Assembly: GCF_022045235.1 (NCBI RefSeq)
Contig: NW_027266341.1
Location: 54,870,001 to 54,934,000 of the forward strand
Reading direction: 5' to 3'
Length of the DNA: 64,000 nt
Origin: Haliotis cracherodii
Taxonomy: Eukaryota
The notes below the pieces were generated by a model, which did not search any database, was not told where the DNA came from, and was given only the letters and a program-made list of their open reading frames with translations. The first letter of the stretch is position 1. Every line of letters begins with the position of its first letter. This document shows positions 10,351-57,485 of this stretch, one piece after another. The translations under genes and the position numbers were made by a program.

Positions 10351-10570
10351 TCCCCTGCTAACGCCCATTCCCTGCTGGGTGTGAGGTAACTATATTATCA
10401 GACTCAACCACTTTCATGGAAGCTGATTTCATGACGGGGCAGCCATTGTCTCTTTAACGACACCGGTGATGGCATGGCGCCTCGTTAAGCTACAGTTAAA
10501 CTTTACGACATTAACTGGCCGGGTATATAAGCCTGGCAACACAGAGACCAGGCACATCATCTCAGACAAC
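10351..10570 (+). promoter_or_regulatory. Proximal promoter and 5' UTR of paralog 1 (TATATAA 10524-10530)
   Basis: ~220 bp closely matching 24700-24920 upstream of paralog 2 while surrounding DNA is unrelated; TATA ~45 bp before ATG. Confidence 0.8.
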
Positions 10571-10576
10571 ATGAAG
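10571..10576 (+). CDS. Paralog 1 coding exon 1 (Met-Lys)
   Basis: caacATGAAG|gtaaga consensus donor; same arrangement in all five paralogs. Confidence 0.88.
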
Positions 10577-11939
10577 GTAAGAGAAACATGCCTAAATCAC
10601 TTTTATCAATATCCTCTCTTTGCTTAGTATATGCTCAGGTGATTCTGGTGATATACATTGGTGATTCACGAATATTTGTCAGAAGAATATAGTCTTATAC
10701 CGTGGTTTTTAGCAATATACAGTTGTATTACGTTCACACTTTCCTTATTATTTCACCAATGTTGAGAAAGGAAAGAAAATATTTCTGGTTCCAGTCTCGT
10801 ATGCCTCATTTCCAGGTTTTAATACTCAAGGTGGGTAACTTTAGAAAGACTACTATGTAACGGCCATCATGATTGATGAAACTATAAATCATAATATGCA
10901 TTTTTCTTTAACTTGTCATGTAAGGGATAGTCACGATCCGATAAATAAGTCATAAGCATGTAAGTGCCAGGCGAATTCTGCAAATCCGCGATCGCTGAAA
11001 GTTTTGCAGAAAATGTAACTTCCCGTAGAATTGCAGTACAATCGCGGAATTTGCCTTTTTTATCGATCAATACTCTGTTTCATTATTTTCAAGCTTTTGA
11101 ATAGAATTTGGCAATCGAATGATGCCCAAACATTTAATATGCGATTCAAACATACACAATCTGAATCCTACAATAAAACAAAATTTGAAATAAATAATTC
11201 TCACTTTTAACGTTCTTGCGGTATTGTGACAACATAAACTATGATTATATGTAGCAATAACTATCAGCGGCACTATTCATATCTATTTGCATAATTATAT
11301 GTGTAAATCCTGTATAAATGTTTAACCTAGTAATTACCAACCAATTTACCCGATTGTTACATTGGAAGGTGTTTACATACACTACTCAAAGAAGTCAAAG
11401 AAGACCCGATTCTTCCATATGCATAGCATGACAGATTAACTATAGCACTATGAACGAATCACGTGTTCTATAACAGTCTCTTCTTTGAAGTAGAATAGAT
11501 ACACCTGGAAAGCACCACTAACTACATACTTCAATATAAAACTGACGACATACATGTTTATGCTTACATAATTATCTAACGATATGTTTTGTTAGTGTTC
11601 CGTTACAATAGATGTTTGACAACCCTTTTATTTGCTGCTTGTGTCGCTTTGCATCATTTGACTGAACTAAAGTCTTAGAAATTGCACTTGAGAAACTGGC
11701 GACATATTTGTCTTCTTTCGCTAATGTTTCAGTATAAGTGATATGAGACATTTATCTTGTGAGACATGAAGATATTCCCAATGATAAATGGCAGTGTCGG
11801 AATTTATGATAATAGAGAAGGGCTGGTGATTTGTAGGTGTATAATAATTGTATATAATGATATGCTATTTCTCAGTGAAACTTTCATTAAGTCACGCTTA
11901 AAGAGAATGATCTCACAACTCTCTATCTTAACAACCTCG

Positions 11940-12570
11940 GTAAGAGATCTACAAACATATTGCACACTAGATTGAGACACAATAGTAGCACACTAAATTC
12001 CGACCTGTTTCGTGTTAATTTATCTGATACTATTTCCTGTAAATCCGAAGCTCCTTGTGAAAATTCATTCCAATTCTTCTTCGAATGTACCTTATATGAT
12101 GATTTTAGGGAGACATTACTGACAGCTATCATTAATCTTTGAGGACAAAAAACTCTACATAGTATTCTTTTGGTGATCCAAACTTAGATGTATTCCTGAA
12201 TACAAAAATATTCTTGTCTGTACACAAATTTATGGAAACGACAAACAGATTCATTAGCTAGCATATTATTGTTTCCAAACTGTTAATCATTAATATTGTT
12301 AAATCTATATTCAACACTAAAATGTAGAATATTAGCATTTGTATGAGATACACACTGTCATCACTTTCCAGCACATTGTACATATCCTTCATATGAGCAC
12401 TGTGTATATATATTGCACTCTATGTTTCCACAATGTGAAGCTTCAACTGTAAATTGTTCATTTTCATTATGCAATATTGTGTATAACTGTATATAGGGAG
12501 AAGGCGATAATAAGTGCTGCACTTGTGCCCAATCCCTTTGTCTTTTTGGACAATAAAATATGTTTAATAA
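11940..12570 (+). mobile_element. 3' fragment of a CR1/L2-group LINE in the paralog 1 intron
   Basis: HTRLRHNSSTLNSDLFRVNL..C..PCENSFQFFFECTLY; ends caataaaatatgtttaa like the tails at ~9420 and ~41385. Confidence 0.7.
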
Positions 12571-12721
12571 TAATAAAACCTCGAATTAGTTATATCGCAT
12601 AAAGTCTCCACATCAGAGACAAATATTAAACATGTAAGCTCATGCTATGGAAAAAACACTTTTTAGCATTTAACACTGAGCGTTTAAGTAACACGAAAAA
12701 CAATGGAGCTATAAGAATATG

Positions 12722-12993
12722 GGCGAAACCGCATTATCAGTGGTTCATATTGGGAAAGGGAGGTCACTCTAATTTCAAACGGGAGCTATCTCCGTTGTTT
12801 TCGTATTTGCGAGTAATGGCGTCACCCACGCTGTACGTTGTTGGTCCAGCTATTAGAATGCCCATCATTTGTTTACGTAGTATATATTCTCAACAACAAG
12901 TGCGTTTAGTTTCGAATGTGGGCCCACCTCGAACTTTCGATTAGGCAAACGGAGTTAGCTTCCTTCTCGAACCACCGATAATGCGGTTTCGCC
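12722..12993. mobile_element. MITE with ~25-bp TIRs and 8-bp TSD (Merlin-like)
   Basis: TIR ggcgaaaccgcattatc(a/g)gtggttc at both ends; TSD agaatatg at 12714-12721 and 12994-13001. Confidence 0.8.
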
Positions 12994-13120
12994 AGAATAT
13001 GAACCATGTTAGGCTGCACTGATGATTTCCAAACAGTTTTCCAAATTTCCGTGTATGAGTAAATTCTTAACAACATGCTTTAAACGACGTCAGCTTCATT
13101 ATCCTTTTTGTATTTTTCAG

Positions 13121-15526
13121 TGTCTCCCCGTCGCCGTCGTCGCTCTGTGCGTCGTTGCTGTCTCCAGCATGTCCTACAACAACAACTTTGGCTCTGTCGG
13201 ACAGGTCGGCCATGTTGCCTCGGGTCTCAACGACTACGGCAAGGGGCAATATGGAGGCGCCGAGGGTCTTCGTCGTTACGGAAGCAAAAACAGCGCTGCC
13301 AATGCCAACAACAAAGCCGCCAACAACTACGCCGCCCACGGTAACAACTACCACAAGGCTGCTGATCAGGCCAGCGCTAAGGGGGACACCGCCTCCAACT
13401 ACTACGGCCACAAGAACGCTGCTCACGCTGACAAAGCCTCCGGTGCTGCCGCTCAGGCCAACAAAGCCAATTATCACGATGCTGCCGCCGCAAACTACGC
13501 CAGGAAGGACGACGCCTCCAAAGCTTCTGCCAACAACGACTACGCCAACAAAAACTACTACCGAAAGGGGAACGTCTACAACACCGGAGTCCACTACGGC
13601 TTCGACAAGAAGTACAACAAGAACGCCGATGAGGACGGTGACTACGAAATTCTTGATGACAGCAGTGCCCACAACCTCGACGAATACCGTGATAAGAACA
13701 AGGCTTACAGCACCGCCAACAGTGACCACGCCGCCAAAAAATATGCTGCTGATCGCTCCCGTGCTCTGAAAGACAGCAAGTACAGTAAAGACGCTTACAA
13801 GGCCAAATACGGTAACGGTAAATACGGCTCTGCTGCTAGTCAAGCTGCCAAGAACGGTGCTGCCAACCACGGTTATGACAGTAAACTGAACGAGGCAGCC
13901 GGAAGCAACAAGTACTATACCGACGCCCACGATGCTGCCATCAACAAACATGACGACTTCACCGGCAAGAACGCCTACTACGATAGAAAGAACGCCGCTA
14001 ATGCCGCTGCACAGGCTGCCCACAACGTTGCCGGATATGGAGGACTCGCTCATGGTGTCGCTGGTGTCGCTGGTTCTCTGGGTGTATCTGGAGTAGGATA
14101 CGGCAAGGGCTACGGTAAGCAGTACGGTCAAGGATACAACAATGGCTACCTCGGACATGACGCACACAACAACAAATACTACGATGCTGGCGCCCACGGT
14201 AAACACGCAAACTACTATGACGGTGCCTCCAATGCCGCTCTCGCCAAAACCGGAGGATACGGATCCAAACTGGGTGAATCCAGCCGAAACAAGGACGACG
14301 CTGCCTATAAGAGAACCGGCTACAACAACGCACAAGCCAACGACTACTACAAGTCTGGAGCTGCTGTTGCCAACAACAACGCCTACAGAGTCAACAAGGA
14401 TGGTGCCGCTGCCAACAACCACGGTTTCAGTCACGCCGGTGCCGACGCTGCCAGTCTCTATGACAACAAAGCCGCAGCTCACGACAATGCCAACTCTGCT
14501 TACGCCAAGGACAACTTCAGACGTAAGTACAACGAGGGTGCCAAGAAACACCATCTGGTCAAGAAGTTCCACCACCATTCTAAAGCCGACGGCAATAACT
14601 ACGAGCGTCTCAACTACGACAAGAAGGACTACAAAGACAACTTCGGCCAGAACGCCGATGCCGCTCATGCCAACGCAAAGAAATACACTCAAAAACTGTA
14701 CAAGAACGCCGCCAATGCTGCCGCCTCTAACAATGATAAGTATGCTGCCAACCACGCCAACAAAGCCTCCAACTACTACGATGCTGCTAATGCTGCCAAC
14801 GGCAACGCCGCTAAGAAATCCAACTACTACAACAAAAACTCCGCTGCCTCTGCTGGTGCTGCCAACGCTGCTGCCAAGTCTTATTATGACAACCACAACA
14901 ACGCTGCTGCTTCTAATGCCAAGAGTCTCAACGACTACTCACACAACCAGTACGGTAACAACGGCCACGCCTTCAACGCCGCCCACGGTGGTGCTGCTCA
15001 CCATGCCGGTGCCGCCCACCACGACGCTCCCAGCTACGGTTACGGCGTCGGACAAGGAATTGGAGGAGCTGGAGTTGTCGGCCTTGGTCACGGTGTTGGA
15101 AGCTTCGGTAACGGCAATGGCGTCGGCGTCGGTAGAGGAGTTGTTGGCCTTGGTCACGGTGTTGGTGGATACGGTAATGGGATCGGCGTCGGTAGAGGAG
15201 TTGTCGGCCTTGGTCACGGTGTTGGTGGATACGGTAATGGAGTCGGACACGGAATAGGAGGAGCTGGACATGGAGTTGTCGGCCTTGGTCACGGTGTTGG
15301 TGGATACGGTAATGGGATCGGCGTCGGTAGAGGAGTTGCCGGCCTTGGAAACAGTGTTGGTGGATACGGCAATGGAGTCGGACACGGAATTGGAGCAGCT
15401 GGACATGGAGTTGTCGGCCTTGGACATGGCGTTGGTGGATTCGGTAACGGAGGTGTCGGCCTTGGGAGAGGCTTTGGTGTTGGTCAAGGTTACGGAGGTT
15501 ACAACAAGTACCCATACTACGGGTAA
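13121..15526 (+). CDS. Paralog 1 exon 2: secreted Ala/Asn/Gly/Tyr/His-rich structural-type protein (803 aa spliced)
   Basis: Acceptor tatttttcag|TGT in frame with ORF 13022-15526; MK+CLPVAVVALCVVAVSS is a signal peptide; strong C-ending codon bias; four paralogs in the window. Confidence 0.93.
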   Translation, partial: CLPVAVVALCVVAVSSMSYNNNFGSVGQVGHVASGLNDYGKGQYGGAEGLRRYGSKNSAANANNKAANNYAAHGNNYHKAADQASAKGDTASNYYGHKNAAHADKASGAAAQANKANYHDAAAANYARKDDASKASANNDYANKNYYRKGNVYNTGVHYGFDKKYNKNADEDGDYEILDDSSAHNLDEYRDKNKAYSTANSDHAAKKYAADRSRALKDSKYSKDAYKAKYGNGKYGSAASQAAKNGAANHGYDSKLNEAAGSNKYYTDAHDAAINKHDDFTGKNAYYDRKNAANAAAQAAHNVAGYGGLAHGVAGVAGSLGVSGVGYGKGYGKQYGQGYNNGYLGHDAHNNKYYDAGAHGKHANYYDGASNAALAKTGGYGSKLGESSRNKDDAAYKRTGYNNAQANDYYKSGAAVANNNAYRVNKDGAAANNHGFSHAGADAASLYDNKAAAHDNANSAYAKDNFRRKYNEGAKKHHLVKKFHHHSKADGNNYERLNYDKKDYKDNFGQNADAAHANAKKYTQKLYKNAANAAASNNDKYAANHANKASNYYDAANAANGNAAKKSNYYNKNSAASAGAANAAAKSYYDNHNNAAASNAKSLNDYSHNQYGNNGHAFNAAHGGAAHHAGAAHHDAPSYGYGVGQGIGGAGVVGLGHGVGSFGNGNGVGVGRGVVGLGHGVGGYGNGIGVGRGVVGLGHGVGGYGNGVGHGIGGAGHGVVGLGHGVGGYGNGIGVGRGVAGLGNSVGGYGNGVGHGIGAAGHGVVGLGHGVGGFGNGGVGLGRGFGVGQGYGGYNKYPYYG

Positions 15527-24920: not shown

Positions 24921-24926
24921 ATGAAG
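24921..24926 (+). CDS. Paralog 2 coding exon 1 (Met-Lys)
   Basis: caacATGAAG|gtaaga. Confidence 0.88.
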
Positions 24927-25684: not shown

Positions 25685-27850
25685 TGTCTCCCCGTCGCCG
25701 TCGTCGCTTTGTGCGTCGTTGTCGTCTCCAGCATGACCTACAACGACAACTTTGGCTCTGTCGGACAGGTCGGATACGTTGCCTCGGGTCTCAACGACTA
25801 CGGCAAAGGACAATATGAAGGTGCCGATGGTCTTCGTCGTTACGGAAGCAAAAACAGCGCCGCCAATGCCAACAACAAAGCCGCCAACAACTACGCCGCC
25901 CACGGTAACAACTACCACAAGGCTGCTGATCAGGCCAGCGCAAAGGGGGACACCGCCTCCAACTACTACGGCCACAAGAACGCTGCTCACGCTGACAAAG
26001 CCTCCGGTGCTGCCGCTCAGGCCAACAAAGCCAACTATCACGATGCTGCCGCCACAAAGTACGCCAGGAAGGACGACGCCTCCAAAGCTGCTGCCAATAA
26101 CGACTACGCCAACAACAACTACTACCGAAAGGGGAACGTCTACAACACCGGAGTCCACTACGGCTTCGACAAGAAGTACAACAAGAACGCCGATGAGGGC
26201 GGTGACTACGAAATTCTTGATGACAGCAGTGCCCACAACCTCGACGAATACCGTGATAAGAACAAGGCTTACAGCACCGCCAACAGTGACCACGCCGCCA
26301 ACAAATATGCTGCTGATCGCTCCCATGCTCTGAAAGACAGCAAGTACGGTAAAGATGCTAACAAGGCACAATACGGTAACGGTAAATACGGCTCTGCTGC
26401 TAGTCACGCTGCCAAGAACGGTGCTGCCAACAATGGGTATGCCAGTAAACTGAACGAAGCTGCTGGAAGTAACAAATACGACGACAACGCTCACAATGCC
26501 GCTATCAACAAATATGACGAGTTCACCGGCAAGAACGCCCACTACGACAGAAGGAACGCCGCTAATGCCGCTGCACAGGCTGCCCACAACGTTGCCGGAT
26601 ATGGAGGTCTCGCTCATGGTGTCGCTGGTTTCGCTGGCTCTCAAGGTCTTCTTGGCAAGGGAGTAGGATACGGCAAGGGCTACGGTAAGCAGTACGGTCA
26701 GGGATACAACAATGGTTACCTCGGACATGACGCACACAACAATAAATACTACGATGCTGGCGCCCACGGTCAACACGCAAACTACTATGACGGTGCTTCC
26801 AATGCCGCTCTCGCCAAAACCGGAGGATACGGATCCAAACTGGCTGACTCTGGCAAAAGCAAGGCCGGTGCTGCCTATAAGAGAAACGGCTACAACAACG
26901 CTCAAGCCAACGACTACTACAAGTCTGGAGCTGCTGCTGCCAACAACAACGCCTACAGAGTCAACAAGGATGGTGCCGCTGCCAACAACCACGGCTTCAG
27001 TCACGCCGGTGCCGACGCTGCCAGTCTCTATGACAACAAAGCCGCAGCTCACGACAATGCCAACTCTGCTTACGCCAAGGACAACTTCAGACGTAAGTAC
27101 AACGATGCTGCCAAGAAACACCATCTGGTCAAGAAGTTCCACCACCATTCCAACGCCGGCGGCAACAACTACGAGCGTCTCAACTACGACAAGAAGGACT
27201 ACCAGGACAACTTCGGCCAGAACGCCAATGCCGCTAATGCCAACGCAAAGAAATACACTCAAAAACTGTACAAGAACGCCGCCAATGCAGCCGCCTCTAA
27301 CAATGATAAGTCTGCTGCCAACCACGCCAACAAAGCCTCCAACTACTACGATGCTGCCAATGCTGCCAACGGCAACGGTGCTAAGAAATCAAACTACTAC
27401 AACAAAAACGCCGCTGCCTCTACTGGTGCTGCCAACGCTGCTGCCAAATCGAATTATGGTAACTACAACAACGCTGCTGCTGCCAACTTCAAGAGTCTCA
27501 ACAACTACGCCCACAGCCAGTACGGTAACAACGGCCACGCCTACAACGCCGCTCACGGTGGTGCTGCTCATCATGCCGGTGCCGCCCACCACGACGCTCC
27601 CAGCTACGGTTACGGCGTCGGACACGGAATTGGAGGAGCTGGACATGGAGTTGTCGGCCTTGGTCACGGTGTTGGTGGATACGGTAATGGGATCGGCGTC
27701 GGTAAAGGAGTTGTCGGCCTTGGAAAAGGCGTTGGTAGCTTCGGTAATGCTGCAGGCGTTATAAAGGGAGTTTCTAACCTAGGAAATGGATTTGGTGTTG
27801 TGGGAGGGTTCGGCGTCAACACCGGTATGGGGCACTATCCCTACTACTAG
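25685..27850 (+). CDS. Paralog 2 exon 2: secreted Ala/Asn/Gly/Tyr/His-rich protein (723 aa spliced)
   Basis: Acceptor gtttttcag|TGT in frame with ORF 25667-27850; signal peptide; highly similar to paralog 1 with a distinct linker and C-terminus. Confidence 0.93.
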   Translation, partial: CLPVAVVALCVVVVSSMTYNDNFGSVGQVGYVASGLNDYGKGQYEGADGLRRYGSKNSAANANNKAANNYAAHGNNYHKAADQASAKGDTASNYYGHKNAAHADKASGAAAQANKANYHDAAATKYARKDDASKAAANNDYANNNYYRKGNVYNTGVHYGFDKKYNKNADEGGDYEILDDSSAHNLDEYRDKNKAYSTANSDHAANKYAADRSHALKDSKYGKDANKAQYGNGKYGSAASHAAKNGAANNGYASKLNEAAGSNKYDDNAHNAAINKYDEFTGKNAHYDRRNAANAAAQAAHNVAGYGGLAHGVAGFAGSQGLLGKGVGYGKGYGKQYGQGYNNGYLGHDAHNNKYYDAGAHGQHANYYDGASNAALAKTGGYGSKLADSGKSKAGAAYKRNGYNNAQANDYYKSGAAAANNNAYRVNKDGAAANNHGFSHAGADAASLYDNKAAAHDNANSAYAKDNFRRKYNDAAKKHHLVKKFHHHSNAGGNNYERLNYDKKDYQDNFGQNANAANANAKKYTQKLYKNAANAAASNNDKSAANHANKASNYYDAANAANGNGAKKSNYYNKNAAASTGAANAAAKSNYGNYNNAAAANFKSLNNYAHSQYGNNGHAYNAAHGGAAHHAGAAHHDAPSYGYGVGHGIGGAGHGVVGLGHGVGGYGNGIGVGKGVVGLGKGVGSFGNAAGVIKGVSNLGNGFGVVGGFGVNTGMGHYPYY

Positions 27851-33442: not shown

Positions 33443-35605
33443 TTACCCGTAGTAAGAGTACTGGTTATAACCTCCAAAGCCTTGACCAACACCAAAGCCT
33501 CTTCCAAGGCCGACAACTCCTCTACCGACGCCGACGCCATTACCGTTACCGAAGCCGCCAACACCGTGACCAAGACCGACAACTCCTTTACCGACGCCAT
33601 TACCGTATCCACCAACACCGTGACCAAGACCGACAACTCCATGTCCAACTCCTCCAATTCCGTGTCCGACGCCGTAACCGTAGCTAGGAGCGCCGTGGTG
33701 GGCGGCACCGGCATGGTGAGCAGCACCACCGTGAGCGGCGTTGTAGGCGTGGCCGGTGTTACCGTACTGTTTGTTGGAGTAGTCGTTGAGACTCTTGGCA
33801 TTTGTAGCAGCAGCGTTGTTGTGGTTGTCATAATAAGATTTGGCAGCAGCGTTGGCAGCACCAGCAGAGGCAGCGGCGTTTTTGTTGTAGTAGTTGGATT
33901 TCTTAGCACCGTTGCCGTTGGCAGCATTAGCAGCATCGTAGTAGTTGGAGGCTTTGTTGGCGTGGTTGGCAGCATATTTGTCATTGTCATGGGCAGCAGC
34001 ATTGGCGGCGTTCTGGTAGAGATTCTGGGTTGTTTTCTTGGTGTTGGCATGAGCGGCATTGGCGTTCTGTCCGAAGTTGTCCTGGTAGTCCTTCTTGTCG
34101 TAGTTGAGACGCTCGTAGTTGTTGCCGCCGGCGTTGGAATGATGGTGGAACTTCTTGACCAGATGGTGTTTCTTGGCAGCATCGTTGTACTTACGTCTGA
34201 AGTTGTCCTTGGCGAAAGCAGAGTTGGCATTGTCGTGAGCTGCGGCTTTGTTGTCATAGAGACTGGCAGCGTCAGCACCGGCGTGACTGAAGCCGTGGTT
34301 GTTGGCAGCGGCACCGTCCTTGTTGACTCTGTAGGCGTTGTTGTTGGCAGCAGCAGCTCCAGACTTGTAGTAGTCGTTGGCATGAGCGTTGTTGTAGCCG
34401 TTTCTCTTATAGGCAGCGTCGGCCTTGTTTCTGCTAGACTCACCCAGTTTGGATCCGTATCCTCCGGTTTTGGCGAGAGCGGCATTGGCAGCACCGTCAT
34501 AGTAGTTTGCATGTTGACCTTGGGCGCCAGCATCGTAGTATTTGTTGTTGTGTGCGTCATGTCCGAGGTAACCATTGTTGTATCCCTGGCCATACTGCTT
34601 ACCGTAGCCCTTACCGTATCCTACTCCAGATACACCCAGAGAACCAGCGACACCACCGACACCGTGGCCACCATGAGCGAGACCTCCATATCCGGCAACG
34701 TTGTGGGCAGCCTGTGCAGCGGCATTAGCAGCGTTCCTGCTGTCGTAGTAGGCGTTCCTGCCGGCGAACTCATCATGTTTGTTGATGGCAGCATCGTGAG
34801 CGTTGGCGGAGTATTTGTTGCTTCCGGCTGCTTCGTTCAGTTTGCTGTCGTAGCCGTGGTTGGCAGCACCGTTCTTGGCAGCTTGACTAACAGCAGAGCC
34901 GTATTTACCGTTACCGTATTGAGCCTTGTAAGCGCCTTTACCGTACTTGCTGTCTTTCAGAGCATGGGAGCGATCAGCAGCATACTTGTTGGCGGCGTGG
35001 TCACTGTTGGCGGTGCTGTAAGCCTTGTTCTTATCTTCATATTCGTCGAGGTTGTGGGCGCTGCTGTCATCAAGAATTTCGTAGTCCCCGCCCTCATCGG
35101 CGTTCTTGTTGTACTTCTTGTCGAAGCCGTAGTGGACTCCGGTGTTGAAGACGTTCCCCTTTCGGTAGTAGTTGTTGTTGGCGTAGTCGTTGTTGGCAGC
35201 AGCTTTGGAGGCGGCGTCCTTTCTGGCGTAGTTTGCGGCGGCAGCATCGTGGTAGTTGGCTTTGTTGGCCTGAGCGGCTGCACCGGTAGCTTTGTCAGCG
35301 TGAGCAGCGTTCTTGTGGCCGTAGTAGTTGGAGGCGGTGTCCCCCTTAGCGCTGGCCTGATCAGCAGCTTTGTGGTAGTTGTTACCGTGGGCGGCGTAGT
35401 TGTTGGCGGCTTTGTTGTTGGCATTGGCGGCGCTGTTTTTGCTGCCGTAACGACGAAGACCCTCGGCGCCTTCATATTGCCCTTTGCCGTAGTCGTTGAG
35501 ACCCGAGGCAACGTGGCCGACCTGTCCGACAGAGCCAAAGTTGTTGTTGAAGGACATGCTGGAGACGACAACGACGCACAAAGCGACGACGGCGACGGGG
35601 AGACA
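33443..35605 (-). CDS. Paralog 3 exon 2: secreted Ala/Asn/Gly/Tyr/His-rich protein (722 aa spliced)
   Basis: Acceptor gtgttttttcag|TGT in frame with ORF 33443-35749; the ORF's poly-Leu start is an intronic (CTA)n run. Confidence 0.93.
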   Translation of the reverse strand, partial: CLPVAVVALCVVVVSSMSFNNNFGSVGQVGHVASGLNDYGKGQYEGAEGLRRYGSKNSAANANNKAANNYAAHGNNYHKAADQASAKGDTASNYYGHKNAAHADKATGAAAQANKANYHDAAAANYARKDAASKAAANNDYANNNYYRKGNVFNTGVHYGFDKKYNKNADEGGDYEILDDSSAHNLDEYEDKNKAYSTANSDHAANKYAADRSHALKDSKYGKGAYKAQYGNGKYGSAVSQAAKNGAANHGYDSKLNEAAGSNKYSANAHDAAINKHDEFAGRNAYYDSRNAANAAAQAAHNVAGYGGLAHGGHGVGGVAGSLGVSGVGYGKGYGKQYGQGYNNGYLGHDAHNNKYYDAGAQGQHANYYDGAANAALAKTGGYGSKLGESSRNKADAAYKRNGYNNAHANDYYKSGAAAANNNAYRVNKDGAAANNHGFSHAGADAASLYDNKAAAHDNANSAFAKDNFRRKYNDAAKKHHLVKKFHHHSNAGGNNYERLNYDKKDYQDNFGQNANAAHANTKKTTQNLYQNAANAAAHDNDKYAANHANKASNYYDAANAANGNGAKKSNYYNKNAAASAGAANAAAKSYYDNHNNAAATNAKSLNDYSNKQYGNTGHAYNAAHGGAAHHAGAAHHGAPSYGYGVGHGIGGVGHGVVGLGHGVGGYGNGVGKGVVGLGHGVGGFGNGNGVGVGRGVVGLGRGFGVGQGFGGYNQYSYYG

Positions 35606-35631
35606 CTGAAAAAACACAGATTGTTTATGTT

Positions 35632-35639
35632 GTAGTAGC

Positions 35640-35715
<76 letters not shown>
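35632..35715. repeat. (TAG/CTA)n microsatellite next to the paralog 3 splice acceptor
   Basis: Roughly 27 triplets; only ~6 at the equivalent site in paralog 4 (45467-45486). Confidence 0.95.
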
Positions 35716-36306
35716 ATATTTTTTTAATTGATGTTTTACTCGACCCCACCTCAAAATAACTGCAAACATATGTCTATTGACTTTCTAATGCTTGCTTTTA
35801 TTTCATAACATTAATTTCGTCAACTTTTTATTTCATAAATGTCCCTTAATTCACTTAAATATTGTTATCGTTAACACCTTAAAGCTATATATATATATAT
35901 ACATACACAAAGTTACGCTTCAGTCGCCACGGACATTGCACTGATGACATAAACGTCCTATTTTAATTCTATAACATTATTCCAACATATTTTCCTTTAC
36001 TTATTACATGTAACTTGATACGGGTTTTATTTATCCACTTCATGAAGAATTGCATTGCTAAATCGTTCAACATTTCGTTAACTGTTTTTCATGTTCATCA
36101 AACGCATTTTTGTCAAATTTGTCAGAGTTTCTTCAATATATCAACTTTAAACAAGCTCATTCGTGTCAAATTATTTTCCGTTTCTAACTTAAACATACAA
36201 AGCAAATGCAAAAACTCTTTCGTTTCTTACTTAAAACCACAAATCATGCAATCACGCAAAATCCTATTTCGCTTCTTACTTCAAGACAGATGTAAAAGTG
36301 TCTTAC

Positions 36307-36312: not shown

Positions 36313-36560
36313 ACTGACTGTTGCCTGTCTGTGTCCGTGTCTGATGAAGAGCCGACTGTTCTGCTGTCTCGCTGTATCAACCCTGCTTATAAACCATCGT
36401 CTTCATCGCCATAAAATTTAACTGGGTCATAACAAGGGATCACACCGCGACCAGCTTCTTTAATCAAACAGTGGCGGCTCCGTCGTTAAACCTAGACCGT
36501 GTGGGGACGGTGGGGGTAGATAGTCGCGTTACCTCACTCTCCCCGGGGGTAGGGACACTA
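36313..36560 (-). promoter_or_regulatory. 5' UTR and proximal promoter of paralog 3
   Basis: TATAAG, GTTAAATTTTATGG and TGAGGTAAC motifs positionally shared with paralogs 1 and 2; near-identical to paralog 4. Confidence 0.75.
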
Positions 36561-36847
36561 AGAGGGACATGGTATACATATTCATACACATTGGCTTTTA
36601 ATGACAGATTAGTAATAACCATTAACTGTTTCAATATATATCCGTATATCGGATTCGATTTACGATTCCGACTATAAAAGTTTATTCCACAATTATAGCC
36701 TTTTTTAATCAACCAATATCCACGTACTCCATCAGTTATGGTATTGCAGTAACTATTATTTTGTATATGTATACTATATGTACTATATATATATACATAC
36801 ATATATATCATTATATGCTCTACTTTGTATTGAGCACTCTCTTCTGC

Positions 36848-37317
36848 NNNNNNNNNNNNNNNNNNNNNNNNNNNNNNNNNNNNNNNNNNNNNNNNNNNNN
36901 NNNNNNNNNNNNNNNNNNNNNNNNNNNNNNNNNNNNNNNNNNNNNNNNNNNNNNNNNNNNNNNNNNNNNNNNNNNNNNNNNNNNNNNNNNNNNNNNNNNN
37001 NNNNNNNNNNNNNNNNNNNNNNNNNNNNNNNNNNNNNNNNNNNNNNNNNNNNNNNNNNNNNNNNNNNNNNNNNNNNNNNNNNNNNNNNNNNNNNNNNNNN
37101 NNNNNNNNNNNNNNNNNNNNNNNNNNNNNNNNNNNNNNNNNNNNNNNNNNNNNNNNNNNNNNNNNNNNNNNNNNNNNNNNNNNNNNNNNNNNNNNNNNNN
37201 NNNNNNNNNNNNNNNNNNNNNNNNNNNNNNNNNNNNNNNNNNNNNNNNNNNNNNNNNNNNNNNNNNNNNNNNNNNNNNNNNNNNNNNNNNNNNNNNNNNN
37301 NNNNNNNNNNNNNNNNN
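36848..37317. other. Assembly gap
   Basis: Run of N. Confidence 1.
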
Positions 37318-37369
37318 GTTTCCTGACAAGTAGTTTGTTCAAGTCGATGTGGGTTATCAGTATTTTGAT

Positions 37370-37623
37370 TGTTTGTTGTTTAACGCCGCATTTAGCAATA
37401 TTGCAGCTATATGAAGGCGGTCTGTAAAAAAATCGAATCTGGACCAGACAATCCAAGGACTGACATCATGATCCACGCAATTGGGATACGATGACATGCA
37501 TCAATCAAGTCAGCAAGCCTGACCACCCGATCCCGTTAGTAACCTTTTTCGACAAGCATAGTCGTCTTTTACGTTAAGTAAGGGTTGCTGAAGACCTATT
37601 CTACCCCGGAATCTTCACGGGTC
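37370..37623 (-). mobile_element. Meta/MESC-like SINE
   Basis: Reverse match to 21727-21997; absent from the paralogous site at ~46960. Confidence 0.83.
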
Positions 37624-37914: not shown

Positions 37915-39938
37915 TATTAAAGAATTAAAGGAAAAATGATGGGTTAAATCAGTCCCACTATGAAATGAGGGTGGCCAGACGAGAACGGATAGGGGATAAT
38001 AGACCACGGGGAGGAAACTCTAGATTATACAAATCCTATAAAAATGCAAAAAGCGAATTTAGACGTTTACACCAAAAATCAAAACGTAAACAGCGCAAAG
38101 AAATAAGTACAGAAGTAGAAAAGACATGTGAAACCGATATAAATACATTCTATAAACATGTTCGTAAGTTGAGACCGGTTATTGATAAATTAGTTTACAA
38201 TGGACGTAGTGCTCTTTCTTCAGCTGATATATGTAAACTGTGGGGTGACTATTATTCAGACTTGGCAAAACCTCACCAGTCTGATGATTTTGACGAAAGC
38301 TATAAACTCACCATTGCATCAAAACTTCATTATATCATGGAACAAAATCGTCATAATCATGATCCACTAGATGATATCCTGTATACAGAAATCCCAGTCC
38401 CAGAAATCAGATCACATATACACAACCTTAAAAGAAACAAATCTCCAGGACCTGATGGTATCACAAATGAACACCTGATATTTGGAGGAGAGATGCGTGT
38501 AGTAACCCTCAAACACCTATTCAATCAAATACTTGCAACCAGTATTATCCATGTGCCTTCAGAAAAGGTATGATAATACTTATTTATAAAGACAAAAACG
38601 ACAAACATGATCCACGTAACTATAGGGGCATAACTCTTACATCGTGTCTATCTAAACTCCTAGAGAAAATCATTATAAGTAGAATAGAAAAATATACACC
38701 CAGTAATCTCCAATCATTCCCCGATGCTTTACAATTTGGTTTCTGAAAGGAACATGGAGCAATCATGTCTGTATTCGCCGTTTTAGAATGTGTTAATTTT
38801 TACCTAGAAAGAGAATCACAAGTGTTTGCTGCATTTTTAGATCATGAAGAAGCTTTCGATCGTATTTGGCACGACGGTCTGTTTGTTAAATTACATGACT
38901 TTGGTGTGAAGGGTAAATTATGGAACTTGCTTCACCACAGCTACACAGACAGTTGTGCTTTTATATCCTACAACGGAGAAAGATCTGATGAGTTTCACAT
39001 TAAACAAGGTGTTGGGCAAGGTCGAGTTATGCCAGCATGGTTCTTTCTCGTTTTCATGAATGACCTTATATGTGAACTAAGGAAAGCAAACGATGGCCTC
39101 CATGTTTATGGCATCTACATACCCTGTGTGTTATTGGCCGATGACACAACGCTCTTGTCTACAACCCCACGGGGCTTACAGTCTTCCCTTGATTCAGTTC
39201 GTTTATATGCCAACAAATGGAGACTCACCTATAATGCCTCCAAGAGTAAATCACTTGTATTCTGCAAAACACGTCAGCGTCATAATAAAGTAACCTACAC
39301 GTTTGACGATGCAATAATTGACACCTCCGACTCCGTCAAATATGGCGGAACAAACATAAACAGTAATTCATCCTGTATAGAAAGAATCATGACATGTTGC
39401 TCGAAAGCAAGAAAATGTGTTAATTCACTACGATCACTCGGCCTCAACGATTCCGACCTCCACCCAGTTACATGTGTCAATATATGGAAAAGAATGATTT
39501 TATCTACAAGCTTTTATGGATGTGAATTGTTACCAGCCTTATACGGTTAAGAACTTGAAATGATTGAATGTACACAACGTTACTTTGCTCGTCATATACA
39601 AGGATTTGGTAAAAGACATCCAACCGATTCGTCTATTTCTAACTTGGGAATGTGGTCAATGAATGGCTACATTGATAAATGTAGACTACAATTATTAGGA
39701 AGGCTCTGCAATAACGATTGTAACTAAATAACAAAAGACCTATTTTGTGCTCACATTGCTACCAACGCGATTGTCAATATTAGTCGCCCAGTAAGCATAT
39801 GCAACATCCTTCTATATACTGCTAAAATACCATTTAGATAACTTTATAAAGGAATATACTGATAGCGGTTCATTCCCAACTAAATCGGTTTGGCGAGCTC
39901 TTGTAATCAGACGTCTATCAGAGAATGAACATTACATC

Positions 39939-43198: not shown

Positions 43199-45442
43199 TT
43201 ACCCGTAGTAAGAGTACTGGTTATAACCTCCAAAGCCTTGACCAACACCAAAGCCTCTACCAAGGCCGACAACTCCGTTACCGACGCCGACGCCATTGCC
43301 GTTACCGAAGCCACCAACACCGTGACCAAGACCGACAACTCCATGTCCAGCTCCTCCAATTCCGTGTCCGACTCCATTACCGTATCCACCAACACCGTTT
43401 CCAAGGCCGACAACTCCTTTACCGACGCCGATCCCATTACCGTATCCACCAACACCGTGACCAAGACCGACAACTCCACGTCCAACTCCTCCAATTCCGT
43501 GTCCGACGCCGTAACCGTAGCTGGGAGCGTCGTGGTGGGCGGCACCGGCATGGTGAGCAGCACCACCGAGAGCGGCGTTGTAGGCGTGGCCGTTGTTACC
43601 GTACTGGTTGTGTGAGTAGTCGTTGAGACTCTTGGCATTAGAAGCAGCAGCGTTGTTGTGGTTGTCATAATAAGACTTGGCAGCAGCGTTGGCAGCACCA
43701 GCAGAGGCAGCGGCGTTTTTGTTGTAGTAGTTGGATTTCTTAGCGGCGTTGCCGTTGGCAGCATTAGCAGCATCGTAGTAGTTGGAGGCTTTGTTGGCGT
43801 GGTTGGCAGCATATTTGTCGTTGTCATGGGCGGCAGCATTGGCGGCGTTCTGGTAGAGGTTCTGGGTTATTTTCTTAGTGTTGGCATGAGCGGCATTGGC
43901 GTTCTGTCCGAAGTTGTCCTTGTAGTCCTTCTTGTCGTAGTTGAGACGCTCGTAGTTGTTGCCGCCGGCGTTGGAATGATGGTGGAACTTCTTGACCAGA
44001 TGGTGTTTCTTGGCAGCATCGTTGTACTTACGTCTGAAGTTGTCCTTGGCGTAAGCAGAGTTGGCATTGTCGTGAGCTGCGGCTTTGTTGTCATAGAGAC
44101 TGGCGGCGTCAGCACCGGCGTGACTGAAGCCGTGGTTGTTGGCAGCGGCACCATCCTTGTTGTATCTGTAGGCGTTGTTGTTGGCAGCAGCAGCTCCAGA
44201 CTTGTAGTAGTCGTTGGCATGTGCGTTGTTGTAGCCGTTTCTCTTATAGGTAGCGTCGGCCTTGTTTCTGCTAGACTCACCCAGTTTGGATCCGTATCCT
44301 CCGGTTTTGGCGAGAGCGGCATTGGCAGCACCGTCATAGTAGTTTGCATGTTGACCTTGGGCGCCAGCATCGTAGTATTTGTTGTTGTGTGCGTCATGTC
44401 CGAGGTAGCCATTGTTGTATCCCTGGCCATACTGCTTACCGTAGCCCTTGCCGTATCCTACTCCAGATACACCCAGAGAACCAGCGACACCACCGACACC
44501 GTGGCCACCATGAGCGAGACCTCCATATCCGGCAACGTTGTGGGCAGCCTGTGCAGCGGCATTAGCGGCGTTCCTTCTGTCGTAGTAGGCGTTCCTGCCG
44601 GTGAAGTCGTCATGTTTGTTGATGGCAGCATCGTGAGCGTTGGCGGAGTATTTGTTGCTTCCGGCTGCTTCGTTCAGTTTACTGTCGTAGCCGTGGTTGG
44701 CAGCACCGTTCTTGGCAGCTTGACTAGCAGCAGAGCCGTATTTCCCGTTACCGTATTGAGCCTTGTAAGCGCCTTTACCGTACTTGCTGTCTTTCAGAGC
44801 ATGGGAGCGATCAGCAGCATACTTGTTGGCGGCGTGGTCACTGTTGGCGGTGCTGTAAGCCTTGTTCTTATCTTCATATTCGTCGAGGTTGTGGGCACTG
44901 CTGTCATCAAGAATTTCGTAGTCCCCGTCCTCATCGGCGTTCTTGTTGTACTTCTTATCGAAGCCGTAGTGGACTCCGGTGTTGAAGACGTTCCCCTTTC
45001 GGTAGTAGTTGTTGTTGGCGTAGTCGTTGTTGGCAGCAGATTTGGAGGCGGCGTCCTTTCTGGCGTAGTTTGCGGCGGCAGCATCGTGGTAGTTGGCTTT
45101 ATTGGCCTGAGCGGCAGCACCAGAAGCTTTGTCAGCGTGAGCAGCGTTCTTGTGGCCGTAGGAGTTGGAGGCAGTGTCCCCCTTAGCGCTGGCCTGATCA
45201 GCAGCTTTGTGGTAGTTGTTACCGTGGGCGGCGTAGTTGTTGGCGGCTTTGTTGTAGGCATTGACAGCGCTGTTTTTGCTGCCGTAACGACGAAGACCCT
45301 CTGCGCCTCCATATTGCCCTTTGCCGTAGTCGTTGAGACCCGAGGCAACGTGGCCGACCTGTCCGACAGAGCCAAAGTTGTTGTTGTAGGTCATGCTGGA
45401 GACGACAACGACGCACAAAGCGACGACGGCGACGGGGAGACA
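43199..45442 (-). CDS. Paralog 4 exon 2: secreted Ala/Asn/Gly/Tyr/His-rich protein (749 aa spliced)
   Basis: Acceptor gtgttttttcag|TGT in frame with ORF 43199-45454; signal peptide; tandem duplicate of paralog 3. Confidence 0.93.
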   Translation of the reverse strand, partial: CLPVAVVALCVVVVSSMTYNNNFGSVGQVGHVASGLNDYGKGQYGGAEGLRRYGSKNSAVNAYNKAANNYAAHGNNYHKAADQASAKGDTASNSYGHKNAAHADKASGAAAQANKANYHDAAAANYARKDAASKSAANNDYANNNYYRKGNVFNTGVHYGFDKKYNKNADEDGDYEILDDSSAHNLDEYEDKNKAYSTANSDHAANKYAADRSHALKDSKYGKGAYKAQYGNGKYGSAASQAAKNGAANHGYDSKLNEAAGSNKYSANAHDAAINKHDDFTGRNAYYDRRNAANAAAQAAHNVAGYGGLAHGGHGVGGVAGSLGVSGVGYGKGYGKQYGQGYNNGYLGHDAHNNKYYDAGAQGQHANYYDGAANAALAKTGGYGSKLGESSRNKADATYKRNGYNNAHANDYYKSGAAAANNNAYRYNKDGAAANNHGFSHAGADAASLYDNKAAAHDNANSAYAKDNFRRKYNDAAKKHHLVKKFHHHSNAGGNNYERLNYDKKDYKDNFGQNANAAHANTKKITQNLYQNAANAAAHDNDKYAANHANKASNYYDAANAANGNAAKKSNYYNKNAAASAGAANAAAKSYYDNHNNAAASNAKSLNDYSHNQYGNNGHAYNAALGGAAHHAGAAHHDAPSYGYGVGHGIGGVGRGVVGLGHGVGGYGNGIGVGKGVVGLGNGVGGYGNGVGHGIGGAGHGVVGLGHGVGGFGNGNGVGVGNGVVGLGRGFGVGQGFGGYNQYSYYG

Positions 45443-47899: not shown

Positions 47900-48065
47900 N
47901 NNNNNNNNNNNNNNNNNNNNNNNNNNNNNNNNNNNNNNNNNNNNNNNNNNNNNNNNNNNNNNNNNNNNNNNNNNNNNNNNNNNNNNNNNNNNNNNNNNNN
48001 NNNNNNNNNNNNNNNNNNNNNNNNNNNNNNNNNNNNNNNNNNNNNNNNNNNNNNNNNNNNNNNNN
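47900..48065. other. Assembly gap
   Basis: Run of N. Confidence 1.
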
Positions 48066-54270: not shown

Positions 54271-54276
54271 ATGAAG
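54271..54276 (+). CDS. Paralog 5 coding exon 1 (Met-Lys)
   Basis: caagATGAAG|gtaaga; TATA-like TTTAAAA at 54195-54201. Confidence 0.82.
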
Positions 54277-55358: not shown

Positions 55359-57485
55359 TGTCTCTCTCTTGCCGTCATCGCCATCTGTGTGGCTGCTGCC
55401 ACATGCGACTACTTCGACAACTATGGCGCCGCCGCCAACAACGGCCACCTGTCAGCCGGCGTGAACAACTACGGGAAGGGACAGTACGCCAACCAGAACA
55501 CTGACCACAAATACAACAGATACGACAACGCCGCTAACACCTACAACAAAGCCGCCAACAACTACGCCAACCACGGCAACCACTACTACAAAGCAGCTGA
55601 TCAGGCCGGCGTCAAGGGAGACGCTGCCTCCAACTACTACGGCAACAAGGCTGCCGCCCACGCCAATAACGCTTACGGCGATGCCGCCCACAACAACAAA
55701 GCCAACTACCACGACGCCGCCGCCAAACACTACGCCAGGAAAGACAACGCCGCCAGAGCTGCTGCTAACAACAACCACGCCAATAACAACTACTACAACA
55801 AGGGTGACGTCTTCAACACCGGCGTCAACTACGGCTTCGACAAGAAATACAACAAGAACTCAAACGAGGATGGCGACTATGAAGTCCTTGACACAAGCAG
55901 CGCTCACAACCTCGCCGACTACCGTGACCACAGTGGAGCCGCCAACTACGCCAACCGCGAGCACGCCAACAAGAAATACGCCGCCGATGCCGCACACGCT
56001 CTGAAGGACAGTAAGTACGGACATGGCGCTGCCGCAAATCAATACGGAAACGGTAAATATGGCGCCGCCACCAGCCACGCTGCCAACAACGGTGCTGCCA
56101 ACCACGCCACCGCTGCCAAATTAAACGAAGCTGCTGGAAGCAACAAATACTATGACAACGCTCATGACGCTTCTAAAGATCAGTACGACAACTTCGCTAA
56201 CAAGAATGCCTTCTACGACAGAAAAAACGCTGCTAACGCCGCCGCACAGGCCGCTCACAACCTCGCCGGCCACGGCACCCACGGAGTCTACGGAACTCAC
56301 GGATTCTCAGGAGTCGGAGGCGTCGGAGGCGTCGGTAAAGGAAACGGCTACGGTAACGGCTACGGTCATGGTAACGGCTACGGTCAGCAATACGGTCAGC
56401 AATATGGTCAGCATGGTCAACAATACGGTCAGCAGGGACATGGTCTGTACGATAACGCCGCTCAAGGTCAGCACTCCAACCATTATGATTCAGCCGCCAA
56501 TGCTGCCAATGTTAGAAATGGTAAATATGGATCTCACCTGAATGACTACCAGAGAAACAATGCCGGAGCTGCCTACCACAAGAACGGCTACAACAACGCC
56601 CAGGCCAACGACTACTACAAATCCGGTGCTGCTGCTGACAAGAACAACGCCTACAGGTCCAACACCGACGCTGCAGCTTCCGACAGACACGGATACGACC
56701 ACGCCGGTGCCGATGCTGCCAGCCTTTATAATGCCAAAGCTGCTGCAACCGACAGTGTCAACTCTGCCTACGCCAAGGACAACTTCAGACGTAATTACAA
56801 CGATGCTGCCAAGAAACACCATCTGGTCAAGAAGTTCCACCACCACAACAACGCCGGCGGCAACAACTACGAACGCCTCAACTACAACAGAAAGGACTAC
56901 AAGGATAACTTCGCCCAGAACGCCAACGCTGCACACTCTAATGCCAACAAGTACTCTCAGAACTATTACAACGACGCTGCCAACGCAGCAGCCCACAACA
57001 ACGACAAATATGCCGCCAACAACGCTGACAACGCCTACAAATACAATGACGTCGCTCAGGCCGCCAACGGCAACGCTGCTAAGAAATCGAACTACTACAA
57101 CCAGAATGCTGCCAATGCTGCCGGAGCTAACAATAATGCCGCTGCTTCTAAATACAACGACTACAACAATGCTGCTGCTGCTCGCGCCAACGTCCTCAAC
57201 GACTATGCCCACAACAATTACGGATCCAATGCCCGTGCCCACAGTAACTCTCACGGCGCTGCTACCAACAACGCCGCCGCCGCTCAACACGGTACCCCCT
57301 ATAGCAACGGCTACGGTGTCGGACATGGAGTTGGTGTCGGTCACGGAGTTGGTGTCGGACATGGAGTTGGTGTCGGAAACGGTGTCGGAGGGTTCGGAGT
57401 TGGAAATGGCGTCGTGGGCGTTGGATTCGGCCGTGGCCTTGCTGGTGGTTTCGGAGGCGCCAAGGGCGGCTACCAGTACTATTAG
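55359..57485 (+). CDS. Paralog 5 exon 2: most divergent secreted Ala/Asn/Gly/Tyr/His-rich protein (710 aa spliced)
   Basis: Acceptor gttttcag|TGT in frame with ORF 55293-57485; MKCLSLAVIAICVAAATC signal peptide; same core motifs; QQYG linker and GVGH tail. Confidence 0.93.
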   Translation, partial: CLSLAVIAICVAAATCDYFDNYGAAANNGHLSAGVNNYGKGQYANQNTDHKYNRYDNAANTYNKAANNYANHGNHYYKAADQAGVKGDAASNYYGNKAAAHANNAYGDAAHNNKANYHDAAAKHYARKDNAARAAANNNHANNNYYNKGDVFNTGVNYGFDKKYNKNSNEDGDYEVLDTSSAHNLADYRDHSGAANYANREHANKKYAADAAHALKDSKYGHGAAANQYGNGKYGAATSHAANNGAANHATAAKLNEAAGSNKYYDNAHDASKDQYDNFANKNAFYDRKNAANAAAQAAHNLAGHGTHGVYGTHGFSGVGGVGGVGKGNGYGNGYGHGNGYGQQYGQQYGQHGQQYGQQGHGLYDNAAQGQHSNHYDSAANAANVRNGKYGSHLNDYQRNNAGAAYHKNGYNNAQANDYYKSGAAADKNNAYRSNTDAAASDRHGYDHAGADAASLYNAKAAATDSVNSAYAKDNFRRNYNDAAKKHHLVKKFHHHNNAGGNNYERLNYNRKDYKDNFAQNANAAHSNANKYSQNYYNDAANAAAHNNDKYAANNADNAYKYNDVAQAANGNAAKKSNYYNQNAANAAGANNNAAASKYNDYNNAAAARANVLNDYAHNNYGSNARAHSNSHGAATNNAAAAQHGTPYSNGYGVGHGVGVGHGVGVGHGVGVGNGVGGFGVGNGVVGVGFGRGLAGGFGGAKGGYQYY

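What the first reader, a model, noticed from the sequence alone, without database searches (positions are those of the whole stretch)
13200..15030. Hidden architecture: two homologous, indel-free ~280-290 aa modules, each centred on a (D/G)G motif (possible giant hairpins)
Seen: module cores align as YANKNYYRKGNVYNTGVHYGFDKKYNKNADEDG-DYEIL versus YAKDNFRRKYNEGAKKHHL--VKKFHHHSKADGNNYERL. The DG codons (13634-13639 and 14588-14593) are 318 aa apart, and each lies near the midpoint of its module (~130-150 aa arms). By eye, divergent paralog 5 aligns to paralog 1 with no gap in either module, while the Gly-rich linker and tail vary freely. The modules have no Pro; part of module 2 has (S/K)xYY-type motifs every ~17-19 aa. 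Inference: strict register conservation in low-complexity sequence implies a real fold, such as two very long hairpins (beta-ribbon with a DG/GG turn, or Ala/Asn helical arms) forming a rod or fibre subunit.
Basis: partly seen in the sequence, partly recalled or inferred. Interest (0 to 1): 0.88.

Follow-up and report, generated by a model that had tools for sequence, protein, structure and literature searches.

The report
Length-locked two-module secreted snail protein
The finding lies in one of six tandem abalone genes for a secreted, uncharacterised, apparently gastropod-only protein whose two ~250-residue low-complexity modules have kept their exact length across all major snail lineages, but the proposed "two duplicated giant hairpins" fold is not demonstrated.

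Summary
The sequence observation holds. The gene (exon 1 ATGAAG at 10571, exon 2 at 13121-15526) encodes a signal peptide, two Ala/Asn/Lys/Tyr-rich, Pro-free modules, a Gly/Tyr linker and a Gly/Val/His/Tyr repeat tail. The DG codons sit where stated, 318 aa apart, and both Gly are invariant.

The genome is black abalone. The window holds five paralogs, a sixth lies just outside, and two 30%-identical paralogs lie 1.3 Mb away.

Homologs occur in Lottia, Gigantopelta, Nucella, Pomacea, Batillaria and Plakobranchus. There is no Pfam domain, no PDB relative and no paper. In 21 homologs at 17-35% identity, the modules carry 0.04-0.09 indel events per sequence per 100 residues; the linker and ends carry 6-9.

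- **Duplication:** profile-profile comparison finds just the 11-residue KKF-x6-(D/G)G core (E 0.32), so it is unproven.
- **Fold:** AlphaFold predicts long helix, short hairpin or loop, long helix in each module, at pLDDT 45-50.
- **Periodicity:** there is no beta periodicity. A heptad signal appears in module 1 only.
- **Hairpin:** no test supported antiparallel packing of the arms.

Best reading: a secreted fibrous or matrix protein with length-locked helical rods. Tissue and material are unknown.

The parts
10523..10532 (+). TATA-like box (gtatataagc) about 40 nt upstream of exon 1
   Evidence: read directly
10571..10576 (+). Coding part of exon 1 (ATGAAG = Met-Lys), followed by donor GTAAG
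   Evidence: Same ATGAAG|GTAAG block upstream of three + strand paralogs. Annotated homolog P0003 starts MK followed by the exon-2 sequence.
10577..13120 (+). Intron (2.5 kb), ending in the acceptor tttttcag
   Evidence: paralog similarity starts exactly after the acceptor
13121..15526 (+). Exon 2, 801 codons plus stop: the rest of the signal peptide and the mature protein
13121..13168 (+). Hydrophobic core of the signal peptide (CLPVAVVALCVVAVSS)
   Evidence: Read directly. Homologs begin MK + hydrophobic stretch. Assignment as a signal peptide is by inspection; no predictor was run.
13265..13993 (+). Module 1 (trimmed residues 32-274), indel-free; predicted helix, core, helix; heptad periodicity in both arms
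13568..13699 (+). Core 1 (residues 133-176): G..V...YGFDKK(Y/F)-x6-(D/G)G-x-(Y/F)E...H.LD; invariant G156 at 13637-13639; conserved acidic stretch after the turn
13994..14194 (+). Gly/Tyr/Ala-rich linker (residues 275-341), an indel hotspot
14195..14956 (+). Module 2 (residues 342-595), indel-free; predicted helix, core, helix; no heptad signal
14507..14647 (+). Core 2 (residues 446-492): basic stretch, KKF(H/Y)H.K..GG.N.ERL.Y.R.....FG; invariant G474 at 14591-14593
15032..15523 (+). Gly (48%)/Val/Tyr/His tail built of 60-135 nt tandem repeats; copy number varies between paralogs
25685..27847 (+). Paralog 2, exon 2 (88-90% aa identity); its exon 1 ATGAAG is at 24921-24926
33446..35605 (-). Paralog 3, exon 2 (91%)
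43202..45442 (-). Paralog 4, exon 2 (92-93%)
55359..57482 (+). Paralog 5, exon 2 (63%); its exon 1 ATGAAG is at 54271-54276

Best explanation
This is a tandemly amplified abalone gene of an uncharacterised secreted protein family found here only in gastropods. Shown: the gene has two exons. It encodes a hydrophobic N-terminus that I read as a signal peptide, two ~250-residue Ala/Asn/Lys/Tyr/His-rich modules, a flexible Gly/Tyr linker and a Gly/Val/His/Tyr repeat tail. Each module has a ~40-residue conserved aromatic and charged core around an invariant Gly. The stretch after the turn in core 1 is acidic, and the stretch before the turn in core 2 is basic. Module lengths have been frozen since before the major gastropod lineages split. 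Inferred: the module arms are long alpha-helices, with coiled-coil-type heptads in module 1, acting as rods whose exact length sets the axial register in a self-assembling extracellular fibre or matrix. The cores would act as kinks or docking knuckles. The Tyr/Lys/His-rich surfaces and the Gly-rich linker and tail would provide cross-linking and cohesion, as in tanned chitinous or proteinaceous snail hard parts. The material is not identified. The two modules may descend from an ancient duplication, but only the core motif and the overall layout still suggest this.
For: Gene model, TATA box, splice sites and hydrophobic N-terminus. Genome identity and family spread (Haliotis, Lottia, Gigantopelta, Nucella, Pomacea, Batillaria, Plakobranchus; all named hits are gastropods). 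Three well-supported subfamilies, each already carrying both modules. Indel density is 0.04-0.09 in the modules against 6-9 events per sequence per 100 residues elsewhere. Invariant G156 and G474 and the conserved cores. Conserved acidic and basic cores. AlphaFold secondary structure of helix (~100 aa), short strands or loop, helix (~115 aa) in both modules, in two independent jobs. Period-3.5 signal in both arms of module 1 (p<=0.01) and no period-2 signal. Purifying selection. Composition is 10% Tyr, 11% Lys and 5% His in the modules and 48% Gly in the tail.
Against: AlphaFold confidence is low throughout, including the conserved cores (pLDDT 45-50, pTM 0.17-0.19), so the helices may only reflect amphipathic low-complexity sequence. 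Module 2 lacks heptad periodicity. Asn and Gly are abundant and disfavour helices. No expression, tissue or proteomic evidence could be obtained. The two Lottia members were not found in the held Lottia shell-proteome supplements, some of which were truncated when stored. The acidic-basic core docking test gave no verdict.
Confidence: 0.55

Rival explanations
1. One reading: the two modules are homologous duplicates, and each folds as one giant intramolecular hairpin about its DG/GG turn (a beta-ribbon or an antiparallel helical pair), forming a rod subunit.
For: Both cores share KK(F/Y)-x6-(D/G)G-x(1-2)-aromatic-E. This is the top-scoring internal profile window and the top hhalign local hit, at near-equal distance from the module starts I chose. 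Both modules are about 250 aa and indel-free, with arms of similar length (~100-120 aa) and the same predicted helix, turn, helix layout. There is weak charge anti-correlation between the arms when folded about centres 152 and 470.
Against: hhalign E 0.32, Prob 0.2%, with nothing alignable outside 11 columns. No diagonal stands out at the G-G register. Shuffle z is only 0.7-3.2. Heptads occur in module 1 only. There is no period-2 signal, which argues against a beta-ribbon. The module-2 model matches extended single long helices, not helical hairpins, and pTM is 0.17. The anti-diagonal signal flips sign within 2-3 residues.
Confidence: 0.18
2. The modules are intrinsically disordered, low-complexity matrix sequence. 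Only the two ~40-residue cores are functional, as short binding motifs for chitin, mineral or a partner. Constant length would then reflect selection on spacer length or a lack of slippage-prone repeats, not a fold.
For: pLDDT is below 50 over most of the modules. Composition is extreme and L/I/V/M are almost absent. Conservation is concentrated in the cores. There is no structural or Pfam relative. Mollusc matrix proteins are commonly disordered (PMC6003135).
Against: Disordered spacers normally accumulate indels quickly, as this protein's own linker and tail do, about 100-fold faster. Scattered conserved Ala, Asp, Gly and aromatic columns run along all four arms. Module 1 has heptad periodicity. 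Ka/Ks of 0.2-0.4 extends over whole modules.
Confidence: 0.25
3. The ORF is a chance or repeat-derived open frame, not a real gene.
For: Low-complexity DNA keeps several overlapping frames open.
Against: Eight paralogs show Ka/Ks below 0.4. Annotated homologs exist in at least seven gastropod genera. Conserved TATA box, exon 1, splice sites and hydrophobic N-terminus are present.
Confidence: 0.01

Closest known systems
Intermediate-filament / keratin architecture (length-conserved alpha-helical rod flanked by Gly/Tyr-rich end domains)
   Same: Rod-like segments of strictly conserved length, a variable Gly/Tyr-rich linker and tail, heptad signal in module 1, and multigene tandem clusters. Database names such as 'filaggrin-2-like' and 'sericin 1-like' reflect this composition.
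   Different: It has a secretion signal and so is extracellular. There is no Pfam hit of any kind, so no Filament domain. Ala/Asn replace Leu/Ile/Val. A conserved Gly-turn core interrupts each rod. Module 2 has no heptads.
Aculeate (bee, ant, hornet) coiled-coil silk fibroins (comparison from my own knowledge, not tested here)
   Same: Secreted, Ala-rich, non-repetitive ~200+ residue helical segments whose length and character are conserved more than their sequence; small paralog sets; they form fibres.
   Different: No sequence relationship was found by HMM search of 1.84 billion proteins, where every named hit is a gastropod. Here there are two modules per chain, with conserved cores and a Gly-rich tail.
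Whelk egg-capsule coiled-coil proteins
   Same: Gastropod, secreted, helical structural proteins. Nucella, a capsule-laying neogastropod, has four family members.
   Different: The family also occurs in the broadcast spawners Haliotis and Lottia and in a sea slug, so it cannot be capsule-specific. No direct comparison was possible.
Mollusc Gly-rich shell-matrix proteins (GAAP_HALAI, shematrin-like)
   Same: Gly/Ala/Asn-rich composition and a GYG-type tail.
   Different: GAAP is described as carrying a G/N-rich region and, in H. laevigata, an A/G/S-repeat disordered region, not this module architecture. Lottia 238000 and 238001 are absent from the held Lottia shell-proteome supplements.

Membership tests
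Any curated protein family (Pfam-A) | Match above the gathering threshold | tested here: not met
   no family for the window protein. Paralog 5 gives only a sub-threshold hit (E 0.9).
Any protein of solved structure | Sequence-profile or fold match | tested here: not met
   only a low-complexity hit to MED12 (E 0.013); no Foldseek match; best Z 7.4, to generic long helices at meaningless rmsd.
Internal tandem duplication (module 1 homologous to module 2) | Significant profile-profile similarity over the module length in one register | tested here: not met
   E 0.3-0.6, and only the 11 core columns align; no diagonal stands out; z 0.7-3.2.
Internal tandem duplication (module 1 homologous to module 2) | Shared layout: same length, conserved core with invariant Gly at the same relative position, same predicted secondary structure | tested here: met
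   (core at 122-132 against 123-133 from the module starts I chose).
Coiled-coil fibrous proteins (intermediate-filament or silk type) | Heptad (3.5-residue) periodicity of apolar residues along the rods | tested here: inconclusive
   p<=0.01 in both arms of module 1, absent in both arms of module 2.
Coiled-coil fibrous proteins (intermediate-filament or silk type) | Self-association into oligomers or filaments | not testable with these tools
   Only a core 1 against core 2 docking job was run, and it gave no verdict.
Beta-ribbon giant hairpin | Period-2 alternation and predicted strands along the arms | tested here: not met
   a period of about 2 reaches p 0.048 once, uncorrected, in 12 arm and residue-set tests and is otherwise not significant; the arms are predicted helical, and strands appear only as 5-residue pairs at the cores.
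Secreted protein | N-terminal signal peptide | tested here: met
   MK + CLPVAVVALCVVAVSS, read from the sequence, with equivalent N-termini in homologs. No dedicated predictor was available.
Mollusc shell-matrix proteome | Detected in shell extracts | tested here: inconclusive
   the Lottia IDs 238000 and 238001 were not found in the held supplements, some of which were truncated. Abalone proteomes were not searchable by sequence.

The most novel reading that the evidence does not exclude
This would be an undescribed class of extracellular fibrous protein found only in gastropods. It would be a 'double-rod' whose two helical modules have kept exact length since the gastropod ancestor, because acidic knuckle 1 and basic knuckle 2 dock molecules in a fixed stagger. 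That would make it a main structural protein of a gastropod-wide secreted hard part, such as the radula or jaw matrix.
Probability: 0.25. Interest if true: 0.75.

Novelty: new variant of a known kind. Interest (0 to 1): 0.55.

Why it matters
Low-complexity secreted proteins are usually dismissed as disordered and fast-evolving. Here about 500 residues of such sequence tolerate substitutions down to 17% identity but almost no insertions or deletions across all major gastropod lineages, while the adjacent Gly-rich parts change length freely. That pattern marks a structural ruler. It defines a protein family with no Pfam domain, no solved relative and no literature. It gives materials biologists a concrete candidate for a snail fibre or matrix protein. 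It also offers a clean natural test of how length and register, rather than sequence, can be the selected trait.

Tried and rejected
**Structure and docking**
- Core 1 against core 2 docking (residues 105-205 against 425-525) with complex prediction gave no verdict: score 0.00, and the alignment was not used. This is not evidence either way.
- Foldseek against the PDB found nothing. VIA wide search returned only generic long-helix chains at Z<=7.4.
- The ESM Atlas gave no usable hit.
- The PDB profile search gave only a low-complexity hit to MED12.

**Sequence tests of the hairpin idea**
- An anti-diagonal (fold-back) correlation of hydrophobicity and charge profiles was inconclusive and unstable.

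**Literature**
- No paper mentions the Lottia, Pomacea or Haliotis accessions.
- GAAP_HALAI was considered as a match and rejected on its published description.

**Tissue guesses**
- An operculum-specific or nacre-specific role is unlikely, because the family occurs in limpet, abalone and sea slug. Larval structures are not excluded.

**Tools unavailable**

- The joined spliced protein (MK + exon 2) was not searched; exon 2 was always used by reference.
- The N stretches at 36848-37317 and 47900-48065 were left untouched.

Full report
**What is at the coordinates**

The window comes from a 1.18 Gb eukaryotic assembly. One distant paralog (L008) is identical in sequence to XP_071088974.1 of Haliotis cracherodii, so the genome is black abalone.

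The finding lies in ORF 13022-15526 (+). The first ~33 codons of that ORF are intron read-through. All paralogs become similar exactly after a polypyrimidine-CAG acceptor. A two-codon exon 1 (ATGAAG|GTAAG) with a TATA-like box lies at 10571, and equivalent blocks lie at 24921 and 54271 for two other + strand paralogs. The precursor therefore starts MK-CLPVAVVALCVVAVSS, which I read as a signal peptide. I did not search the joined spliced protein; exon 2 was always used by reference.

The cluster comprises:
- five paralogs in the window: 13121-15523 (+), 25685-27847 (+), 33446-35605 (-), 43202-45442 (-) and 55359-57482 (+);
- a sixth just beyond the window end;
- two 30%-identical paralogs 1.3 Mb away.

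**Checking the observation**

The DG codons are at 13634-13639 and 14588-14593, 318 residues apart. The modules contain no Pro, Cys, Trp or Met, and YY motifs at 535, 552 and 571 give the 17 and 19 aa spacing. Paralog 5 differs in length from paralog 1 only inside the Gly-rich linker.

Module composition is Ala 24%, Asn 15%, Lys 11%, Tyr 10%, Asp 8%, Gly 8% and His 5%. The tail is 48% Gly and is built of 60-135 nt tandem repeats with variable copy number. Ka/Ks between paralogs is 0.18-0.39 in both modules, and 0.06 for module 1 of the distant pair, so these are real genes under purifying selection.

**The family**

Pfam gives nothing. A profile search of 1.84 billion representative proteins returned 40 hits. 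Every named hit is a gastropod:
- Lottia gigantea, two consecutively numbered loci (238000 and 238001) on one scaffold;
- Gigantopelta aegis;
- Nucella lapillus, four members;
- Pomacea canaliculata;
- Batillaria attramentaria;
- Plakobranchus ocellatus;
- Haliotis rufescens and H. cracherodii.

The remaining hits are unnamed transcriptome or metagenome sequences. A maximum-likelihood tree resolves three strongly supported subfamilies. All of them already carry both modules, and one contains a limpet, abalone, caenogastropods and a sea slug. The two-module layout therefore predates the split of the major gastropod lineages.

**The indel map is the strongest result**

I aligned 21 full-length homologs at 17-35% identity to the window protein and counted indel events.

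| Region (trimmed residues) | Events | Events per sequence per 100 residues | Sequences with no event |
|---|---|---|---|
| Module 1 (32-274) | 2 | 0.04 | 20 of 21 |
| Module 2 (342-595) | 5 | 0.09 | 17 of 21 |
| Linker (275-341, 67 aa) | 126 | 9.0 | 0 of 21 |
| N-terminal end (1-31) | 41 | 6.3 | 3 of 21 |
| C-terminal end (596-620) | 43 | 8.2 | 3 of 21 |

- Two of the module-2 events sit in a record labelled partial (P0025) and in a Nucella record with a 68-residue deletion (P0023); I suspect annotation errors in both.
- The register is not arbitrary. Conserved Ala, Asp, Gly and aromatic columns are scattered along all four arms.
- The modules are therefore about 100-fold more resistant to length change than the neighbouring sequence.

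**Are the two modules homologous?**

Homology is not demonstrable.
- hhalign of module 1 against module 2 gives E 0.61 with a shallow profile.
It covers 11 columns at E 0.32 and probability 0.2%.
- Pairwise Smith-Waterman scores exceed composition-preserving shuffles by only z 0.7-3.2.
- A composition-corrected diagonal scan shows nothing at the G-G register.
- The core pair is nevertheless the best 12-column window in the whole protein (z 6.6, next 5.5). It lies at almost the same distance from the two module starts I defined.

An ancient duplication is plausible from the layout. Only the KK(F/Y)-x6-(D/G)G-x(1-2)-aromatic-Glu motif remains to suggest it, and convergence on a similar turn motif is equally possible.

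**What fold?**

AlphaFold2 was run with a 36-sequence alignment on residues 1-620. It gave H30-132, E140-144, E158-162 and H169-287, then a coil linker, then H343-456, E462-466, E478-482 and H491-611. Mean pLDDT was 45.5 and pTM 0.19. Module 2 folded alone gave H7-115, a loop and H142-269, with pLDDT 49.7 and pTM 0.17.

Both modules therefore receive the same secondary-structure layout: a long helix, a conserved turn region and a long helix. The tertiary arrangement carries no confidence. Foldseek found nothing. An exhaustive structural search matched only extended single long helices, such as tropomyosin, at Z<=7.4 with meaningless rmsd. It did not match helical hairpins.

Family-profile Fourier analysis shows significant 3.5-residue periodicity of apolar and aromatic residues in both arms of module 1 (p<=0.01 against column shuffles) and none in module 2. 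There is no convincing period-2 signal. The beta-ribbon version of the hypothesis is therefore disfavoured. Helical arms are the best current reading. Coiled-coil packing is supported only for module 1. A profile-level fold-back test gave weak charge anti-correlation about centres 152 and 470 that flips sign within a few residues, so it is inconclusive.

**A conserved charge asymmetry**

Another note on this window (s1-834563) prompted me to compare the cores across the family. The stretch after the turn in core 1 carries -3 to -9 net charge in most of the 22 sequences. The stretch before the turn in core 2 carries +4 to +9 in most. This fits docking between the two cores, within or between molecules. 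The one complex-prediction job gave no verdict, so this remains an inference.

**Function**

Shown:
- N-terminus with the features of a secretion signal;
- gastropod-restricted at the sensitivity used;
- amplified to six near-identical tandem copies in abalone;
- rich in Tyr, Lys and His, with Gly-rich ends;
- length-locked modules.

Inferred: a bulk extracellular structural protein. The helical rods would set a fixed assembly register, and the Tyr/Lys/His and Gly-rich parts would be cross-linked.

The material is unknown.
- The Lottia members were not found in the held Lottia shell-proteome supplements.
- GAAP_HALAI, a similarly named abalone shell protein, is described with a different architecture.
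- Presence in limpet, abalone, caenogastropods and a sea slug argues against a nacre-specific, adult-operculum-specific or egg-capsule-specific role. It is compatible with radula or jaw, other cuticular linings, periostracum or larval structures. I rank these only as guesses.

**Verdict**

The object is an uncharacterised gastropod protein family that resembles length-locked fibrous proteins with Gly-rich end domains but belongs to no known family.

Noticed in passing
window 36848-37317 and 47900-48065: Two N stretches lie 1.2-2.5 kb upstream of the two minus-strand paralogs, on their own strand. That is where their exon 1 (ATGAAG|GTAAG) would be expected, and no such exon 1 was found for them in readable sequence.
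   Followed up: partly
window 38765-39550 (+): A 261-aa ORF with a reverse-transcriptase domain (RVT_1, E 1.4e-20) lies between paralogs 3 and 4. It is a retroelement fragment inside the cluster. Neighbouring ORFs at 36464-37456 (-) and 37965-38573 (+) have no Pfam hit.
   Followed up: partly
window ~35606-35750 (L003 upstream of exon 2): A long CTA/CTG-type trinucleotide microsatellite, which reads as poly-Leu in frame, lies in the intron directly upstream of the exon-2 acceptor of paralog 3. A shorter version occurs in paralog 4.
   Followed up: no
G000:C78:56236400-56238763 and 56247274-56249301 (L007, L008): Two divergent paralogs (30% identity, subfamily B) lie 1.3 Mb downstream. L008 is annotated 'sericin 1-like' in H. 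cracherodii. The six subfamily-A genes of the window cluster did not appear in either protein database search, so they may be unannotated.
   Followed up: partly
window 15071-15447: The tail repeat array (60, 75 and 135 nt units encoding GVGRGVVGLGHGVGGYGNGI-type peptides) differs in copy number between the near-identical paralogs. Tail length ranges from about 60 to 164 aa.
   Followed up: partly
A3 alignment, subfamily C (Batillaria, Nucella P0012, Plakobranchus P0022, P0006, P0007): Many positions that are Tyr or Phe in abalone are Trp in subfamily C (for example DNWERLN, NQWARNN). Aromatic character is conserved at those columns rather than residue identity.
   Followed up: no
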